Part shown: in pieces, positions 12,468 to 21,464 of the stretch | How positions within the stretch are numbered: the stretch's first letter is position 1 | How the letters are laid out: every line of letters starts with the position of its first letter | DNA from: Guillardia theta CCMP2712 | Lineage: Eukaryota > Protista > Cryptophyta | Assembly: GCF_000315625.1 (NCBI RefSeq) | Contig: NW_005434420.1 | Span: 1 to 46,978, forward strand | DNA length: 46,978 nucleotides | Reading direction: 5' to 3' | Notes under the pieces: generated by a model | The model's database searches: none | What the model was told of the DNA's origin: nothing | Seen by the model: the letters and a program-made list of their open reading frames with translations, nothing else | Program-made: the position numbers and the translations under genes

Positions 12468-15400
12468 ATGGTGAAGACTGCTTTCCAGAATTGGATCCAG
12501 GGGCCGCATGACCCTGAGAAACGAACGTTCATTAGCAGCCTCTTTCTGCGATTGATCGAATCAAGAGCATGGGAATATCTCTTCCTGTGCATCATTGTTT
12601 TCACCGCTACAATCAAATTCACAGACCTGCGAGACTCTCCCCCGGAGTGGAAAGCTAGTCTTCTTCAGATATCTCTGGTACAAAGTTTCCATGTGTGAAT
12701 TAGCTGGTAACGCTGTTTATGCGCAGTATGGTTGTTTGACCTACAGCATTGAATGGATCATAGAACTACTCACTCTGGGATCTTCGGAGTTTTTTAGCAG
12801 CGGCTGGTATCGAACGGACACCATTGTCAATGTGTTCAACTGGGGAAGCTATCTGGACTCAAACGGATATCTTCCGAGGATTCTCAGTCTGATTTTCCCG
12901 AATATCGCCTTCTTAAGGATCCTGCGCTTTCTGAAGCCTCTAGGACGAGTGAGACTGCTCTTTTCTTCCAAAGTTGTGGTCAAGACGGTTGCTGGAGCCA
13001 TGGCGTCAATGGGCCCTGTGCTTGCCTTGGTGTTCTTTCTTGTGCTTTTATTCGGAGTCGGAGGGATCTATTTGTTCGGAAAGGGTTTAGCCTTGTACTA
13101 TAGGTGTGGGCTTCCTCTGACAGCCGATCAATCCAAGTTCTTCTTCAATGAAAGCTCCTACCAGCCAGCCCCTGGATCTGATATCAACATCGCAAGCTGC
13201 GGGGTGAACCTAACACGCATTGACGAGTTTCAATCACAGTACAACGCATACTTGCGAGAGGCGTCAAGCACAGGTCAATCATTTGAGTTTGCAGACTTTG
13301 ACCTAGACGGAGCCGATGAGAGATACTGCATAGCCTTGACCCCTGAACGTCTTTGCGCTTGTGCCTCCCTCCCCAACGGTGAGAGTCCAGACGTTTGTGT
13401 GGACACGGCGAACTGCCGAGAGAATATTTGCTTTCGAGGAGATATCATTCCGGTCGATTCCTTGCATGGGTTCAACAATTTTGCAACTGCATCAATGACT
13501 GTGATAGCTGTCTTCTTTCAGAAGAATTGGTCCATGTTCATGGATGCCTGTGTCCAGACTTCGGGCCCTTTCTTCGGATATTTCTATTACATCTTTCTGG
13601 TTATCTTTGGAAGCTTTTGTCTCCTCAACCTCACTGTTGCAACTGTTGGGCAAACGTTTACAAGAGTGAAAAAGGAAGCTGAGAAGAAAAGAGCAGATAA
13701 AGATGCCGAGCAAGCACGAAAAGACAAGATTCAAGTATTTTCAGATGTTTGAAATTCTTGTTATACCGATGATCTAATCTGTTGATCTTTAGGCTGAAAG
13801 AGATGAAATGAAGAAAATGGCCAAGGCAAAAAGTGATGAAGAGGGCGGCGAGGAGGGGTCCGAGGTTTGACCATATCACCTACCCTGCATCGTTTGTTTA
13901 ACTCTTGCCAGGATGTGACATTGCAGTTCGACGAGAACACATTGTTTTATTGTTGGTTATTGGGACTTGTTGGACTCCCATTCATCCACCGCATCTACTT
14001 AAAGACATGGAAAGAGGGAAGGTGGTTTGTTCTCCGTATTGCTTCGTTCAACTTTCTTTTCTTGGGATGGGTCTCGGATTATTTTCTCCTCGAAAAATTG
14101 AATCAGCTCGCCTCTGTTGCCGAGATTGAATATATTGAAGAGAAAAAGATGAAGACTATTGAACATCTCGAAACCGAGAGAGGCAGAATCTGTGAGCTTG
14201 TTATATTTCTTTCGTTCTTCTTATCAATTCTTGATCTAACTTGCTTCTGCAGTGTCGTCCTTTACGGGAGGATGGAGATTGAAGCTCGCGATGGTTCTCT
14301 CATATCCCCTCAAGCGTCTTCCCCACCACACATCCCTGCAGTACTTGGACTCTCGTCTGAAAGCATTGAGGCAAACAAACGAGGAGGAAAACGTGTCAGA
14401 GGGAGAGGAAAGCTCGGAAGTTTCCGATGACGAGACAACTTCTGAAGCTGAGAGCGGCAAGGCAGCCACTGCAGCACAGGAGGGACAGAGCATTTTTGCC
14501 TGGATTGCCGATCTTGTTGTAGTGATCAATGCTGGCTCGATGGCTATGAGTGGCTTCAACGATAAATTGAACCCTATTCTGAACGGCGTGGGTTATTTTG
14601 CTTCTTTGTTCTTCATTGCTGAAGCCGTCGCCAAATCTATCTCATACGGGGGATGGAGGTAGAGAGTGAATTGTGTTCCTCATCCGCCTGCTCCTACAGC
14701 TGACATCGCTGGCAGCTACTACCTCCTGGATGGCGGAAATCGTTTTGACTTCACCCTTGTCTTGGTCCCGACGATCGGCGAAGTGACAACGGAGGGGTCG
14801 AGCTTTCTGGGGCTGGGGGCAGACTACATCTACCAGGCTCTCGCCCTCCAGGCCATGCGCGTCTTCCGAATCGCGAAGCTGACAAAGCACCTCACCGGGC
14901 TCAGGCGACTAACTGCCCGCGCGTTTGGCAGCCCCGCAGGAGTTGTGTACGCGCTACTTGTAACCATAGGGTTCATCTGCTTCTGCTCCTGTTTCGGCAA
15001 CGAGCTCTTTCGCTCCAGTGTGGTGAAACCCATCCTTTGACTCGAGCTTCTTTGACGCCCAGCAGGAATTTGCGGTGGCTCGGAATGACTTCCAGTACTT
15101 CCTTGGAGCGATGAAGTGCTTGCTAGAGTTCCTCCTGGGCGATCGCTACATGCAGTCCCTTGACATCGCCTACCAGTCGAAGGATGTCATCGGTAAGGAG
15201 AACAAGAAGTTGAGGGGGGGGCTCGTGACGTAATGACAGGGGTTCTCTTCTTCCTTGGTTACTACTACGTCGCAAACTTTCTTGTGCTTCGTATGTAAGT
15301 AGCTTGACCCTTACGACGCGTGGAACTTGATGATAACGAAATGACAAGTTACCGTTCAGGTTCATAGCTCTTATCCTTGAAAACTTTGAGTTCGACGAAG

Positions 15401-18400
15401 ATAAGAAGATCAGCATTCAGATTCAGCTGTTTCAGAAGCAACAAATCCTCATGAACGACCTCATCGACGGCAGGTTACTTCTGGCCTTCCTTGCTCCTTG
15501 TCTCCATCTCTCATCGCCTCCTGCTCCTTGGCTCACCTTCCCCGCAGTGCGAGAGGCTTCAGCATCCAAGAGCAGTTTGCTCGCCTTCGCAAGCAGAATT
15601 TGGACGAGGATCATCTGAGTGTGTTCCAGCAGAAATGGTCCCAGGTGGTGAAGGACAGGGGTGAGTGAACACGCTGCTGCCTCTTTCCCCTCTACCTCTA
15701 TGTTTATTTCCGTCTCTCTTGCGCCTTATCAGCCAATCATCTTCTGCTGATTTTCTAGTTCCTCTGTATCGTGCCATTCATACACACACTCATCGTCTGA
15801 ATATCGCCTTGATCTCAATCGTTGCCATCGCAGCCACCAACATGCAAAGGGCTGTTTTGCATTGACGATAATTGCTTATCCGCTGATGTTTGTGCTTATT
15901 CGCTGATGTTTGTGCTTATCCGCTGAAGATTGTGCTGCCTTGCAAAGTGACAGCGTCCTCGTGCAGCTGCAGAAGTGAGCAAGGACGACGCGGGAGGAGG
16001 AGAAGAGAGTTACTTGTGGAACATTCTCATCAGTGCAAATGAAAGAAAGGAGCAGGGGTTGAGAAAGGAGAAGACAGAATCAGAGGGACTGATCAAGATT
16101 CTGATCAAGTTGATTATGGTGATCCTTCATCTCTTTGCCGATGAAGCTGACTTCGCAATTTCTTCTCTTTATACCATCTTGAACCAACCCCCGTCCTCGT
16201 TCATGTCCTCGTCCTTGTTCTTGTTCTCATCTTCATGTTCCTCCTCCTCTTGTTGTCTCTTTCTCTTCGTGTCCAGATGGCACGCAAGCTCTCCTACACT
16301 TTGGTCGAGAACCAGAAGTTTGACCTTCTTGTTCTCTTCGCCGTCATCTTCTCGGTGGTGTTGGTGCAGGTGGACACGAGCGACAACCCGATCTTCACAG
16401 ACGAGGTTCGACTGACGATCGACATCAGCCTGCTCTGCTTCTTCACCTTTGAGACCAGCCTCAAGATCTTCACCTATGGCTTTCTCACTCCTACAGGAGT
16501 CTCCCCGAAGAGCATCGAGTACCCGCAGGGCAAGCCCGCCTTCTTCTCCAACACGGAGGACGGAGGATGGAACCTTCTCGACGCCGGGGTCGTCATCCTC
16601 ATGATACTCGACGTGCTCCCCCTCAGCTTCAGCGTCGGAGGCTTCAAGTGCATCCGAATCGTCAGGATCGTCCGGCCGCTGCAAAAGCGAAGTCAGACAG
16701 TGAAGGGGCTCATGGCGGCGCTGATCGCGAGCATCGGGTCGATCTTCCACGTTATCAACCTTCTTCTTCTCCTCATACTCATCTTCGGCCTCATGGGCGT
16801 CTCGCTCTTCCGCGGCAGGCTCAACGTCTGCAACGATGAGGCCGTCTCCCACTCTCGCGACTGCATCGGCGTCAACTACGGCGGCATTCCTGATGTCCCT
16901 TGCCGCGGGTATGTCGATCGGATCTGCCAGCAGGAGCTGGGCAGGTTCATCGGTCAACAAGTTCTTGTCCCCCGTGTCTGGTCCCCCCCCTCTGAGAACT
17001 TCGACAACCTGGCGGTCGCCAGCATCACTCTCCTCCGCCTCTCTGCGCAGGACAACCTGCGGTCCATCTTTCACAGCCTCATGGACATGGCGCGCTACTA
17101 CCAGGTTGTGTGCAGCGGGGACGGGGAGGACGGAGAGAACGGTTGTCCAGCAGGACAGAACCAGTACATCGTCGCATCTCAGTCGCAAGCAGACACAGCG
17201 CCGGAGAACATCCTCTTCCCCCTGTGAGCTGCCTTCCCTGCTGTTGTCCAGCTGACTGACATGCCTTCAGGTTCTACATCTTCATCGCCAACATCTTCAT
17301 CAGTCAGCTCGTGATCGGCGTGCTTATTGACAACATCAGGAGGCAGACTGGCTCCGCCCTCTTCACTGAGCAGCAGCGCATCTGGCGAGCGACGCTCATC
17401 ACTATGGATCGGCTCAAGAAGAAGTTCAAACCTCAGATCCCCGAGCAGCCGCTGCGCAAGTGGCTCTACCTGGTGCTAGAGTCGGAGACCTACAACATCT
17501 TCATCATGTCCGTCATCATCCTCAATACCCTCTGGATGGCCACAGAGCATGAACGTGAGCCTTGAAGGCCCTGCAGCTCTGCTCCAGCTGACCCTCCTTT
17601 GATTTCAGCTCATCCAGCTTTGTACAGCACGATTCAGAACTATGTCGATCCTGTTTTCATCGTCATCTACGTCGGTACGGCAAGAGCTTTGTGGCTTCTT
17701 GTTGCGCTTCATCTCGCTTCTGCCTTCAAATGCGCTCTGTTCTTTTTCCTCTCCTTACTGGTCAAACTCCCTTGCCTTTTGCCCTTATCCTTGTCTTTAT
17801 CTTTGTTGTCTTTTCCATTGCATATTCTTTTTCGATCAACATTTCGTCTTCTTTCTCACGCATGCTGACAGGGGAGACGATAGCGAAGATGACGGCATAT
17901 GGTCTGATCTCTTGGTCGGAAGAATCCCCTGCGGAGGAGCAGGAGGAAGAAAAAGAGCCCACCTCCTCCTCTTCTTTCTTCTCCTGTTTCAAGAGATACA
18001 AGAGCCCTTACTTCGGAGATGTACGCACAACTTTCTTCCTCCTTTACCTGTGGATGTTGTCATTCTCCTGTCTTCATTGTCATTTCGTTGCTCCCACTTC
18101 TCTAATTTCCTTTTGTATTTCTGTTTCTACTTCTATTCCTATCTCCATTTCTACATCTACATCTACTTCTACTTCTACTGCAACTTCTACTTCTACTTCT
18201 ACTTCTACTTCTACTTCTACTTCTACTTCTACTTCTACTTCTACTTCTCACTTCCTCATCGAGTTCACCTGACCTTTTCCTTATTGCAGGCCTGGAATTT
18301 CTTTGATTTTTTCGTGGTTGCTATGAGCGTGTTAGATTCTTCGGGCATCATCAGTGGTCTTAGCTTCCTCAAGCTCCTCCGAGTTCTCCGCGTCTTCCGT

Positions 18401-21280
18401 CTCGTTCGCCGCGTGAAAACTCTCCAGGTAGATGAGACCTGTACACCCTTTTCCTCGCCTCCTCTCCTCCTTTCCTCCTCTCTTCTCCCAATCTGTCCTT
18501 CACTTCCTCTCCCTTGTATCTTCTGCTCTGCTCTGCTCTGCTTCCCTTCTCTCTATGTCTCGCCTTCTGAGCAAGAGGCAGGTGATGATCACGACGCTGC
18601 TGGGAGCGATCAACGCAATCCTCGCAGCTCTTCTGTTTCTCAGCATCTGGATCTTTATCTTTGCGGCGGTGGGGTCAGACAATCAGATGTTCAATGACCT
18701 CCGGCATGGCCTCGTCATCGACTCTCGCTGGAACTTCCACACTCTCTTCAACGCCGTCCTCCTCCTCTTCCGCACGGCGACTGGGGACGGATGGTTCGAC
18801 CTCCTTTATGATGCTTCTGTCCGCCCGCCCTACTGCACGGCCTCGTCGCCGGAAGTGCCGGTGGGAGACTGCGGGCGAGGGATCATAGGGTACATCTACT
18901 TCATCATCTTCTACTTCGGATGCAACTATATCTTCCTGCCTCTCTTCGTCGCCACTCTCATTGACTACTTCTTCGAGGTGAACGTGTGGAAAGGGAGAGG
19001 GGAAGAGGAGGGAAGGGAGGGGAGGGTGAGGGGAGGGAGGGGGGAGGAGAGTTGAAGTGCTGAAGGCTGGCGGCAGGCGGAGGTTGAGAGTCAGTCGCTG
19101 TTCAACGGGGATGACTGCGAGACATACGCCAACGTCTGGTCGGAGTTTGACGAGGAGGGTGACGGAAGAATTTCAATCGAGAACCTCCGACCCCTCGTCG
19201 ACAGACTCGGTAAGATCCAATTTATCTTCTTTTTATTCAACCAGCCAAAGAACATTTCAAGTTTAGTTGCCTCGGTTTCAACGATTAGACAGATTTTGAA
19301 AAAGATAGTGGAGTTCAGGATCTTAGCTGGAAAGATATTCCAAGTTGAGTGGGGAGCAATGAAATTATGGGGAGAAACTTCAAATTCTGAGCTGACTTTC
19401 CAACGTGTTTGACAGCTGTCAATGGGCATCCAGCAGGCTTCAGAGTCTCGTCGGACCTCGAGCGGTTCAAGATGATCTGGTCAAGGGTCATGACCGACCC
19501 CAGCACGTTCCCACTTGACGGGCTGCGGGTGCCTGATGAAGTCAGCAAGGAGATCGGGCTGACAGTCATCACTAGGTAACCTTGAGCTGCCTTCCTCTCA
19601 TGCTGCCGTCCCCTGCCCTCCTCAGGCTCTTTCCATCACTTCTTCGATGCTTCCTCAGGATCCTTCCTCTTGCTTTCCTCTGCCGAACGTTTGTGTCCCC
19701 GTGCATGCTCCGTTGTCTTTGGCGTGTCTCCCCGTCCCTTGTCCTCGTCTGACATCTCATCTCAGAGACAACATGGTCAAAGCGTTCGGGAGCGGGAAGA
19801 GAGCTCTACGGATCCGCGAGTTTCTTTACAGCAAATTCCCGGAGATCAAGAACAACGAGGTTGAATTCAAGTATGCCGCTAAGGTGAGAGGAAGAAGAAG
19901 GGAACGGAAAGATATGATGAAGGAGATGTAGATAAACGGGAGAGCAGAGCAGAGCAGAGCAGAGCAGAGCAGAGCAGAGCAGAGCAGAGCAGAGCAGAGC
20001 AGAGCAAATGATTCTGAGCACAGGTTCTCTGCATCTTCATGGACGGCATTCGCGCGCCCATCACGATTGCAGATCTTGTAAACCAGGGAGCGTCCAAGCA
20101 AATTCTAGTGGCGCTGCAAGGAGACGCAGTGATACGGGGAAGAGATGGGAAGGAGAACGATCGTTGGCTGCCGCTCGGAGTTCACAATCAGCTGACGAAC
20201 AAGCTGGCGGATGGGGTGCCTAAGGGATCGAAGAAGAAGAAGATGCCTGGGAAGGAGGAGCTGCCAAACATCATGAAGGCAGTGAAACTGGTTCTCTTCA
20301 TTTCCTTCTCCTCTCCTCCATCCCCTCCTGTCATCGTCTCTGTATACTTCATGTTCCTTTCCACTGCTGATGATCTTCCTCTATTTGTTTCCTCTTCCTC
20401 TTCCTCCTCCTCCTCCTTATGTGACGTTTTGTTGCAATCAGGTACAACTTGAGCTCAGGCCTCCAGTGCTGGACCCGGACGAGCCTCCTCCGATGCCAAC
20501 AGCGCAGAAGGTCGGGGAGCTGATGGGAAAGATCCGCTTCATGAAGGATTCTTACGAGGATGTGCGTCCTGCTTCTCTTCCTTGCCTGCCCCTGACACTC
20601 TCGCTAGATTGTCGACCGGCTGATCGATGAGGTTCTCTGGGGGAAAGAGGAGGAGGAGGAGGCGCAGGAGTCTGTCATCAGCATCCTCCTTGGCGAGATC
20701 ATGGTGCTGTCTGTTCATCAGTTTGCGCAGGAAACATCATCCAAGGTGAGTCGCCTGCTCGACTTGTACCTGAGTGTCTAATCCTTGCCAAGATCTGGAC
20801 GCAGATAAAGCCAAGGGAGACCAACAAGGCTCTCTTTCGCTTCACACAGGCAGCGAGTGAGTCTCCTCCCTCCTCCTTGCTCTCCCCATCCCTGACCTCT
20901 CCTCAGAGTCGAAGATGCAACAAGGCATCGCGGCCGCAGTCAAGTCTGTGCCCCGCGGCTGGCTCAATGCGAAGAGGTCGCGGCCGGCGCTGAGGAGGAT
21001 GAAGCCCACGGAGGAGACGAGGGACCACACGCAAGAAACCGTCCTCTCCCTTGCCCTCAAGGCCCCCGCCGCTCCTGCTCGCCCTGCTCGCTCCTCCAGC
21101 CGGTACAAAGTCTCACCTCCTCTGCGCCAAGCGATCCGGAAGGGCAAAGTGAACTCGACGTGGAAGACTATGTTTCGAGGAAACTTCGGAGGAGGAGGGG
21201 CGGAAGGCGAGGGCGACTGGAAGACAGAATACAGCAAGAGGTTGGAAGGACTGAGGCGATGGACAGGCATAGAAGTATGA
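12468..21280 (+). CDS. Four-domain (4x6TM) voltage-gated cation channel alpha subunit, Nav/Cav/NALCN superfamily, many exons
   Basis: Four S4 segments: LRILRFLKPLGRVR, MRVFRIAKLTK, FKCIRIVRIVRPLQKR, LKLLRVLRVFRLVRRVK. S3 motifs WYRTD, GNRFDF, WNLLD, WNFFDF. Four P-loops: FNNF...FFQKNW, FQYF...LLGDRY, FDNL...SAQDNL, FHTL...ATGDGW. S6 ends LLNLTVATV, FIALILENF, VIGVLIDNI, LFVATLIDYF. III-IV linker GSALFTEQQRIW. EF-like C-terminal YANVWSEFDEEGDGRISIENL. Final exon ends IEV* at 21280. Confidence 0.93.
15873..15937. repeat. Intronic 20-bp tandem repeat x ~3
   Basis: tgcttatccgctgatgtttg units inside the channel gene. Confidence 0.75.
18165..18249. repeat. (TTCTAC)n microsatellite in channel intron
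   Basis: Directly visible hexamer array. Confidence 0.9.
19941..20005. repeat. (AGAGC)n microsatellite in channel intron
   Basis: About 13 pentamer copies. Confidence 0.92.
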
Positions 21281-21464
21281 CAACGAAGAGGATTAGGAAA
21301 AGGTCTGAAATGTCTGTATCATGTGTTGAGAACGAATTAAGTTAAGTTGTGATCATACCAAAATTACAACAGGAAAAATCAAAAACAAAACCACACCTCA
21401 ATTCAAGGCAACAAGACTCTAGGACATGATTCAGAGCCAGGCAAGGGGAACAACGTTGATCATC

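What the first reader, a model, noticed from the sequence alone, without database searches (positions are those of the whole stretch)
13468..18800. Four-domain channel with a K-D-D-D selectivity filter (lysine in domain I)
Seen: counting from the conserved P-loop Phe, the filter position (18) is K in DI (FFQ-K-NW, codon 13522-13524), D in DII (LLG-D-RY, 15141-15143), D in DIII (SAQ-D-NL, 17051-17053) and D in DIV (ATG-D-GW, 18786-18788). The usual Trp two residues later is Y in DII and L in DIII, and DII +1 is Arg where Cav channels have Asp. Established: Cav = EEEE/EEDD, Nav = DEKA or DKEA, NALCN = EEKE/EKEE, so known filter lysines lie in DII or DIII. Inference: an independent route to Na+/monovalent selectivity or reduced Ca2+ permeability in a cryptophyte.
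Basis: partly seen in the sequence, partly recalled or inferred. Interest (0 to 1): 0.8.

Follow-up and report, generated by a model that had tools for sequence, protein, structure and literature searches.

The report
Algal four-domain channel with domain-I lysine
This is an intact, intron-rich gene for a voltage-gated four-domain cation channel whose pore ring reads Lys/Asp/Asp/Asp, one member of an undescribed cryptophyte channel family that keeps a lysine in domain I, where no characterised sodium, calcium or NALCN channel has one.

Summary
A spliced model on the + strand (ATG at 12468, followed to 20570; 20 GT..AG introns, no stop) gives four 6-TM repeats. Their filter codons are AAG 13522-24 (K), GAT 15141-43, GAC 17051-53 and GAC 18786-88.

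Alignments to solved Cav3.2, Cav1.1, Cav1.2 and Cav1.3 chains put K, D, D and D on the filter glutamates. For domain II this is read through a homologue.

The lysine is conserved. Twelve distinct relatives were read at the domain-I site, and eleven have K. They include Guillardia theta XP_005839567.1, its MMETSP transcript and a Hanusia phi transcript. One lineage is Q/Q/D/D.

Family rings are K/D/D/D or K/E/D/D. In a quick tree the family is a separate, long-stemmed clade outside the Cav3, Nav and L-type clades. Of 110 other full-length hits, none has a clean domain-I lysine. Three papers place filter lysines in domain II or III only.

All four S4 segments are charged. The III-IV linker carries an IFM-like 'ALFT'. 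No aspartate follows the filter residue in any domain; domain II has Arg there.

The function is inferred: a fast-inactivating, Na+/monovalent-preferring channel with poor Ca2+ selectivity.

Same-genome notes list separate D/D/K/D and S/S/R/D channels.

The parts
12468..21283 (+). Whole gene. The CDS was modelled from ATG 12468 through 20570 (1853 aa, 21 exons). A conserved C-terminal tail continues to about 21280, where there is a stop at 21281-21283. The exons between 20570 and about 20915 are not resolved.
   Evidence: Spliced model. There are 20 introns, all GT..AG, 43-306 nt long. The model is colinear with the intron-poor homologues L005, L003 and P0209. Tail homology. The start Met aligns with the N-terminal Met of the G. 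theta transcript P0246 and follows an in-frame stop.
12727..13734 (+). Exon 2: domain I, S2 to S6, including the long S5-P extracellular loop and the P-loop.
   Evidence: Pfam Ion_trans, E = 2e-26. The best PDB matches are Cav3.2, Cav3.3 and Cav3.1.
13471..13545 (+). Domain I P-loop, 'FNNFATASMTVIAVFFQKNWSMFMD'.
13522..13524 (+). Domain I filter codon, AAG = Lys336.
   Evidence: Aligns to the DI filter Glu of Cav3.1, Cav3.2 and Cav3.3. K is conserved in 11 of 12 relatives.
15090..15164 (+). Domain II P-loop, 'FQYFLGAMKCLLEFLLGDRYMQSLD'. It lies in exon 6 (15066-15192).
15141..15146 (+). Domain II filter codon GAT = Asp763, followed by CGC-type Arg764 at the +1 ('beacon') position.
   Evidence: Relatives have D or E at position 0 and R, H, S or N at +1.
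17000..17074 (+). Domain III P-loop, 'FDNLAVASITLLRLSAQDNLRSIFH'. It lies in exon 11 (16277-17223).
17051..17053 (+). Domain III filter codon, GAC = Asp1183.
   Evidence: D is kept in every relative read.
18735..18812 (+). Domain IV P-loop, 'FHTLFNAVLLLFRTATGDGWFDLLYD'. It lies in exon 16 (18582-18977).
18786..18788 (+). Domain IV filter codon, GAC = Asp1521.
   Evidence: Aligns to the Cav1.1 DIV filter Glu.
12910..12954 (+). Domain I S4, 'FLRILRFLKPLGRVR'.
   Evidence: 6 K+R in the S4 region, mostly at every third position. Coordinates.
14855..14908 (+). Domain II S4, 'MRVFRIAKLTKHLTGLRR'.
16643..16690 (+). Domain III S4, 'FKCIRIVRIVRPLQKR'.
18365..18418 (+). Domain IV S4, 'FLKLLRVLRVFRLVRRVK'.
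17350..17376 (+). Motif 'GSALFTEQQ' in the short III-IV linker, at the place of the Nav 'IFMT' inactivation particle.
   Evidence: It is kept as ALY/ALF-T in relatives. The comparison with IFMT rests on established knowledge (PMC5824947; 10.1101/2020.04.29.068528).
19110..19208 (+). Proximal C-terminal EF-hand-like stretch, 'DDCETYANVWSEFDEEGDGRISIENLRPLVDRL'.
   Evidence: Conserved in L003, L005 and P0209. Not scanned against Pfam on its own.
13942..14091 (+). Two conserved hydrophobic stretches in the I-II linker.
   Evidence: Noted only; topology not tested.
18428..18581 (+). Intron 15.
   Evidence: No coding sequence is affected.

Best explanation
The window carries an intact gene for a voltage-gated, four-domain (4 x 6TM) cation channel. 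It belongs to an undescribed cryptophyte family.

In this family the ring of four pore-lining filter residues is Lys in domain I plus three carboxylates. It reads K/D/D/D here and in the closest relative, and K/E/D/D in a sister group.

Shown:
- the gene structure;
- the four repeats with charged S4 voltage sensors;
- the position of the lysine on the filter Glu of solved Cav channels;
- its conservation;
- the family's separate place in a tree;
- the lack of an Asp next to the filter residue (Arg in domain II here).

Inferred: depolarisation moves the four S4 segments and opens the pore. The protonated domain-I lysine cuts the ring charge from -4 to -2, or to about -1 with Arg764. It abolishes the high-affinity Ca2+ site and acts like the 'built-in cation' of DEKA or EEKE filters. 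The channel would then pass mainly Na+ or other monovalent cations, with little Ca2+ selectivity. The 'ALFT' motif in the short III-IV linker would give Nav-like fast inactivation.

Confidence that it is a real, conserved K-in-DI channel is about 0.9. Confidence in the selectivity mechanism is about 0.55.
For: Gene model: 1853 aa with no stop, and 20 introns that are all GT..AG.

Pfam Ion_trans matches pieces of all four domains.

Filter alignment to Cav3.2, Cav3.1 and Cav3.3 for DI, to Cav1.3 for DII (via L005), to Cav1.2 for DIII and to Cav1.1 for DIV.

DI Lys is kept in L003, L005, L010, L011, L012, L013/14, L015, P0074, P0048, G. theta XP_005839567.1 with its MMETSP transcript (P0244/P0246), and Hanusia phi P0245. 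L012, the closest relative at 63% identity, has the same K/D(R)/D/D.

The family forms a clade with support 100 on a long stem, outside the Cav3, Nav and L-type clades.

Among 110 full-length library hits, DI is E or D in nearly all. None has a clean K at that site.

All four S4 segments are charged, and the III-IV linker carries ALFT.

Literature:
- A lysine in the filter is the determinant of Na+ selectivity or permeability, and is known only in DII or DIII (PMC10120453, PMC6259924, PMC5824947).
- An Asp at +1 favours Ca2+ selectivity, and losing it makes Cav3 Na+-permeable (PMC10120453).
- Low fixed charge goes with Na+ selectivity (PMC7764494).
Against: There is no electrophysiology for any family member.

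No annotated product of this gene was found in the protein collections.

The filter lacks the Nav outer acidic ring. Positions +3 are S/M/R/F.

DII and DIII lack the usual +2 Trp, so pore geometry may differ from the templates.

One family lineage is Q/Q/D/D, so the positive charge is not indispensable.

Whether a lysine works in DI as it does in DII or DIII is unknown. My recollection that the position of K matters in Nav mutants, and that single E-to-K Cav1.2 mutants lose Ca2+ affinity, is from memory and was not checked here.
Confidence: 0.6

Rival explanations
1. It is a functional voltage-gated channel that remains a non-selective or Ca2+-permeable cation channel. On this reading the domain-I lysine only tunes conductance, divalent block or pH sensitivity. 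It would resemble Nav2 (DEEA) or NALCN-type pores and would not create Na+ selectivity.
For: Three carboxylates remain in the ring. The DIV P-loop is very Cav-like, 'LLLFRTATGDGW' with Asp at +4. DII to DIV of the family match L-type Cav best. A Q/Q/D/D relative shows the site tolerates a neutral residue. NALCN with EEKE is Na+-permeable yet strongly Ca2+-blocked (PMC10120453).
Against: No Asp at +1 in any domain, and an Arg at DII +1. The ring charge is at most -2. Every characterised four-domain channel with a filter lysine is Na+-selective or Na+-permeable (PMC5824947).
Confidence: 0.25
2. The window copy is a silent or decaying paralogue, or a channel-derived sensor that no longer conducts. 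Only the K/E/D/D paralogue (XP_005839567.1) would be the working gene.
For: No RNA run on record holds the stretch. No annotated or transcript-derived product of this gene was found.
Against: 1853 codons without a stop across 21 exons, with 20 canonical introns. All S4 charges and the gate and linker motifs are kept. A 63%-identical relative, L012, has the same K/D(R)/D/D ring and long open frames. That shows purifying selection on this subtype.
Confidence: 0.08
3. The lysine is not in the filter ring. The cause would be a register shift in the DI P-loop, or an assembly or base-call error.
For: The family is divergent, at about 25-35% identity to solved channels. DII and DIII deviate at +2.
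Against: The alignment runs ungapped from the conserved 'F-N/D-N-F' to the +2 Trp in three Cav3 structures. K sits exactly 18 residues from the Phe in DI, as the filter residue does in the other three domains. The same K is present in independent assemblies and in G. theta and Hanusia transcripts.
Confidence: 0.03

Closest known systems
Cav3 (T-type) calcium channels, filter E/E/D/D
   Same: Four-domain voltage-gated architecture. Asp in DIII and DIV of the filter. Cav3 chains are the best PDB matches for domain I. The K/E/D/D sister group differs from EEDD at a single position.
   Different: DI is Lys, not Glu. DII +1 is Arg/Ser/His/Asn, not the invariant Asp. The family is not in the Cav3 clade. 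DII to DIV match L-type better than T-type. The III-IV linker is Nav-like.
Animal Nav1 channels, filter D/E/K/A (cnidarian D/K/E/A)
   Same: One lysine among carboxylates in the filter. A hydrophobic triplet followed by Thr in a short III-IV linker. Charged S4 in all four domains. An EF-hand-like proximal C-terminus.
   Different: The lysine is in DI, not DIII or DII. DIV is Asp, not Ala or Gly. There is no outer acidic ring at +3. The clade is separate.
NALCN, filter E/E/K/E or E/K/E/E
   Same: One Lys plus three carboxylates, net charge -2.
   Different: The lysine is in a different domain. NALCN has an Asp at DIV +1 and charge-poor S4 segments. This channel has Gly there and charge-rich S4 segments. 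PDB matches to NALCN are the weakest.
Cryptophyte and oomycete D/D/K/D(G) four-domain channels (Pozdnyakov et al. 2018, PMC5824947, clades WSC VI/VIII)
   Same: Protist four-domain channels with one Lys and three Asp. They were proposed as Na+-permeable candidates. One is in Guillardia, and the scan noted one elsewhere in this genome.
   Different: Their lysine is in DIII, with D/E at DIV +1. None appears among the 150 best library hits to this DI. None of the ten Guillardia accessions or S4 strings of that paper match this gene or XP_005839567.1.
Guillardia theta XP_005839567.1 (GUITHDRAFT_101752, UniRef100_L1JW22), a 'hypothetical protein'
   Same: Same family. K in DI, D in DIII and DIV. 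Same N-terminal start, linker hydrophobic stretches and ALY/ALF-T motif. It is transcribed (MMETSP transcript P0246).
   Different: Only 53% identical to the window protein. DII is Glu with Ser at +1 (K/E/D/D), not Asp-Arg.

Membership tests
[quoted passage not shown] | Four homologous 6-TM repeats in one polypeptide | tested here: met
   Pfam Ion_trans on pieces of domains I, II, III and IV. Spliced model with 24 TM-like segments. Colinear matches to all four repeats of Cav and Nav chains.
[quoted passage not shown] | S4 with Arg/Lys at every third position in the repeats (voltage sensing) | tested here: met
   6, 6, 7 and 7 K+R in the S4 regions of DI to DIV.
[quoted passage not shown] | P-loop between S5 and S6 with one filter residue per repeat, and Trp at +2 | tested here: inconclusive
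   The filter residues align in all four repeats. Trp at +2 is present only in DI and DIV. DII has Tyr and DIII has Leu, and this is conserved in the family.
Cav3 / T-type | Filter E/E/D/D | tested here: not met
   K/D/D/D.
Cav3 / T-type | Asp at DII +1 ('beacon'; PMC10120453) | tested here: not met
   Arg764. The family has R/H/S/N.
Cav3 / T-type | Falls inside the Cav3 clade | tested here: not met
   FastTree on 63 rows. The named Cav3 proteins and EEDD rows form their own clade with support 100. This family is a separate clade with support 100. The tree is quick, and the long stem makes deep placement unsafe.
Nav1 | Filter lysine in DIII (DEKA) or DII (DKEA), with Ala/Gly in DIV | tested here: not met
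   Lys in DI and Asp in DIV.
Nav1 | IFM-type hydrophobic motif in a short III-IV linker | tested here: inconclusive
   'ALFT' sits at the corresponding place, in a linker of about 55 aa. Its function was not tested.
NALCN | Lys in DII or DIII, Asp at DIV +1, and charge-poor S4 | tested here: not met
   Lys in DI, Gly at DIV +1, and charge-rich S4.
Protist D/D/K/D channels (PMC5824947) | Lys in DIII, with D/E at DIV +1 | tested here: not met
   The S4 strings of all ten Guillardia entries differ from this gene.
Cryptophyte K/[D,E]/D/D family (defined here) | DI filter Lys, DIII and DIV Asp, DIII +2 not Trp, and 'SFCLLNLTVATVGQ' in DI S6 | tested here: met

The most novel reading that the evidence does not exclude
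Cryptophyte algae have their own family of fast-inactivating, Na+-selective four-domain channels. In this family the selectivity lysine sits in domain I. It would be a further independent origin of lysine-based Na+ selectivity, the first in a photosynthetic eukaryote, and natural proof that the lysine works from a domain other than II or III. Such channels could carry Na+ spikes that amplify the depolarisation produced by the cation channelrhodopsins encoded 20 kb away in the same window.
Probability: 0.4. Interest if true: 0.8.

Novelty: new variant of a known kind. Interest (0 to 1): 0.62.

Why it matters
Ion selectivity in four-domain channels is explained largely by one ring of four residues. 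A single lysine is the accepted switch from Ca2+ to Na+ selectivity. Every studied case has it in domain II or III (PMC10120453, PMC6259924).

A conserved, naturally selected lysine in domain I, with Asp or Glu variants in domain II and a Gln/Gln variant in the same family, is a ready-made set of natural mutants. With them one can test whether the position of the lysine in the asymmetric pore matters.

The finding also bears on whether photosynthetic protists have four-domain Na+ channels at all. Fast Na+ signalling was long held to be confined to animals, until the single-domain EukCatB channels were described (10.1101/2020.04.29.068528).

The main survey of protist four-domain channels (PMC5824947) did not include this family.

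Tried and rejected
No cDNA check of this paralogue was therefore possible. They lie in intron 15, and the splice search was restricted to acceptors at or after 18488.

2. Literature word searches for KEDD/KDDD/KEEE, 'lysine in domain I' and named E-to-K mutants found nothing relevant.

3. The idea that the published Guillardia D/D/K/D is a mis-ordered model of this gene (K/D/D/D rotated by two domains) was rejected. The short III-IV linker and the C-terminal EF-like region fix the domain order here. The scan also notes a separate D/D/K/D gene on another piece.

4. The idea that the gene is a Cav3 orthologue was rejected by the tree and by the DII +1 residue.

5. MAFFT --auto on full-length sets timed out twice. 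FFT-NS-2 was used instead.

6. ESM Atlas gave only generic Ion_trans clusters.

7. An exact look-up of the DIII ORF product found nothing on record.

8. No structure prediction was attempted. The four-domain core exceeds 1200 aa, and a spliced protein has no reference.
Full report
**What is there.** The + strand between about 12.4 and 21.3 kb holds a multi-exon eukaryotic gene. Stop-free stretches in three frames carry S1-S6-like segments. Pfam Ion_trans matches pieces of domains I, II, III and IV.

I joined the stretches by listing all GT/GC..AG pairs that keep the frame open. Each joined peptide was scored against intron-poor homologues fetched later. The result is a model of 21 exons:
- 12468-12677, 12727-13734, 13912-14191, 14253-14658, 14716-15022
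- 15066-15192, 15240-15294, 15360-15473, 15548-15660, 15967-16118
- 16277-17223, 17271-17554, 17609-17674, 17872-18020, 18290-18427
- 18582-18977, 19077-19209, 19416-19575, 19766-19883, 20024-20290, 20442-20570

The model translates to 1853 residues without a stop. All 20 introns are GT..AG and 43-306 nt long.

Two junctions in unconserved linkers are less certain: 13735/13911 and 16119/16276. The conserved tail continues to about 21280, but the exons between 20570 and about 20915 were not resolved. The ATG at 12468 follows an in-frame stop. It aligns with the first Met of a Guillardia theta transcript of a paralogue.

**The observation.**
- AAG 13522-24 = K336, in 'FFQKNW'
- GAT 15141-43 = D763, in 'LLGDRY'
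- GAC 17051-53 = D1183, in 'SAQDNL'
- GAC 18786-88 = D1521, in 'ATGDGW'

phmmer against all PDB chains aligns the DI P-loop without gaps to Cav3.2, Cav3.3 and Cav3.1. There, K lies on the Glu of 'TLEGW'. The other three positions align as follows:
- The DII position aligns to the Glu of 'GEDW' in Cav1.3. This was read through the homologue L005, which is colinear with the window.
- The DIII Asp aligns to the Glu of 'MEGW' in Cav1.2.
- The DIV Asp aligns to the Glu of 'GEAW' in Cav1.1.

The order of the repeats is fixed by two features: the short III-IV linker, and the EF-hand-like stretch after repeat IV. The lysine is therefore truly in domain I.

The side remarks also hold: Tyr at DII +2, Leu at DIII +2, and Arg at DII +1.

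**Is the lysine real and selected?** A full HMMER scan of 1.84 billion representatives with the DI exon gave a small set of close fragments at 45-70% identity. After those came about 140 ordinary four-domain channels at 25-36% identity.

In the close set the site is K in P0001, P0005, P0007, P0036, P0042, P0048 and P0074, and Q in P0020. I fetched the contigs behind these proteins and read all four P-loops.

| Ring | Members |
|---|---|
| K/D/D/D | window; L012 (closest relative, 63% identical, also 'GDRY') |
| K/D/?/? | L010, L011 |
| K/E/D/D | L003 group, L005 group, L013/L014, L015, P0206 |
| Q/Q/D/D | P0205 |

Seven further fragments keep the DIII Asp, with a non-Trp residue at +2.

P0206 is identical over its whole length to two Guillardia theta proteins. 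One is XP_005839567.1 from strain CCMP2712 (GUITHDRAFT_101752, 'hypothetical protein'). The other is a G. theta MMETSP transcript. A Hanusia phi transcript fragment is 90% identical and also has the lysine. The domain-I lysine is therefore present in mRNA of two cryptophytes, though for the K/E/D/D paralogue and not for the window gene.

**Where the family sits.** In a FastTree of 63 full-length proteins, the nine family rows form one clade. Support is 100 and the stem is long, at 1.49.

The clade lies apart from three others: named Cav3 proteins with EEDD rows, named Nav proteins with DEEA rows, and the L-type-like rows. The tool warns about long-branch joins, so I claim only that the family is not inside those clades.

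PDB affinities are mixed. DI matches T-type best, while DII to DIV match L-type best.

Among 110 other full-length hits aligned with the model, DI is E in about 90. It is D, A, S or G in most of the rest. Only P0080 has 'TLK-W', a lysine beside a one-residue gap, and it lies in another part of the tree.

**What is known.** Three open papers place filter lysines only in DII or DIII of animal Nav1 and NALCN (PMC10120453, PMC6259924). In protists they are reported as D/D/K/D(G), A/G/K/E, S/S/K/E and D/K/T/D (PMC5824947).

That survey lists ten Guillardia accessions with their S4 strings. None is this gene, and none is XP_005839567.1. Notes of this scan record separate D/D/K/D and S/S/R/D channels elsewhere in the same genome. 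These fit the survey's Guillardia entries and show that the present gene is a different one.

I found no annotated or transcript-derived product of the window gene itself.

**How it probably works.** The following are shown:
- All four S4 segments are charged.
- The S6 gates are conserved.
- The III-IV linker is about 55 residues long and carries 'GSALFTEQQ' at the place of the Nav 'IFMT'.
- There is a C-terminal EF-like stretch.
- No Asp stands at +1 in any domain. The +1 residues are N, R, N and G.

The rest is inferred from established filter chemistry. A ring of four carboxylates plus the DII +1 Asp makes the high-affinity Ca2+ site (PMC10120453, PMC7764494). One lysine lowers the fixed charge, and in every tested case it gives Na+ selectivity or permeability (PMC5824947).

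Here the ring charge is -2, and about -1 if Arg764 counts. I therefore expect a depolarisation-activated, fast-inactivating channel that prefers Na+ or other monovalent cations and selects poorly for Ca2+. My confidence in that is about 0.55.

My recollection that single Glu-to-Lys changes in any Cav1.2 repeat weaken Ca2+ block, and that Nav selectivity depends on where the lysine sits, is from memory and was not checked.

**What speaks against the reading:**
- The outer acidic ring of Nav channels is missing. Positions +3 are S, M, R and F.
- The +2 Trp is lost in two repeats.
- A Q/Q/D/D lineage exists.
- There is no functional or expression evidence for this paralogue.

**Limits.** Those places lie in intron 15. 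No letters of them went to a search tool afterwards.

The organism name is coded. 'Guillardia' rests on relatives and on earlier notes, not on a direct identification.

No four-domain structure could be predicted, because the core is longer than 1200 aa and a spliced protein has no reference.

**Verdict.** The finding is a new variant of a known kind: a conserved cryptophyte channel family with the filter lysine in domain I. One member is already public but undescribed.

Noticed in passing
window 13942-14091: The I-II linker holds two hydrophobic stretches, 'LFYCWLLGLVGLPFIHRIYL' and 'WFVLRIASFNFLFLGWVSDYFLL'. They are conserved in L005 and in the G. theta paralogue. They could be an extra membrane hairpin or a gating element.
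   Followed up: partly
P0205 (2419 aa; cluster of 44 members on ENA metagenome contigs): A lineage inside the same family has Gln in both DI and DII (Q/Q/D/D). It is a natural neutral counterpart of the lysine.
   Followed up: partly
P0080 (2224 aa, JGI metagenome): An unrelated four-domain channel, near a ciliate sequence in the tree, reads 'GITLK-W' in DI with D/E/E in the other repeats. It may be a second, independent domain-I lysine, but the site has a one-residue gap.
   Followed up: partly
P0126 (Rotaria sordida CAF1358221.1): A rotifer protein inside the Cav3 clade reads E/K/D/D ('ISIQKDWT'), which would be a T-type channel with a domain-II lysine.
   Followed up: no
window 18100-18260 (intron 14, 18021-18289): A long pyrimidine-rich simple repeat. 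It reads as (FY)n, (L)n or (ST)n in the three frames and inflates mechanical ORFs there.
   Followed up: no
window 16169-17188, minus strand: A 339-aa ORF lies antisense to the domain III exon. I take it for a shadow of the coding strand and not a gene.
   Followed up: no
Whether the proximity means anything is unknown.
   Followed up: no
L013 8204-9556, L005 11957-13348, L014 11856-13208: In three relatives' contigs, a 450-463 aa C2-domain gene lies a few kb downstream of the channel on the opposite strand. This suggests conserved local gene order in that subgroup.
   Followed up: no
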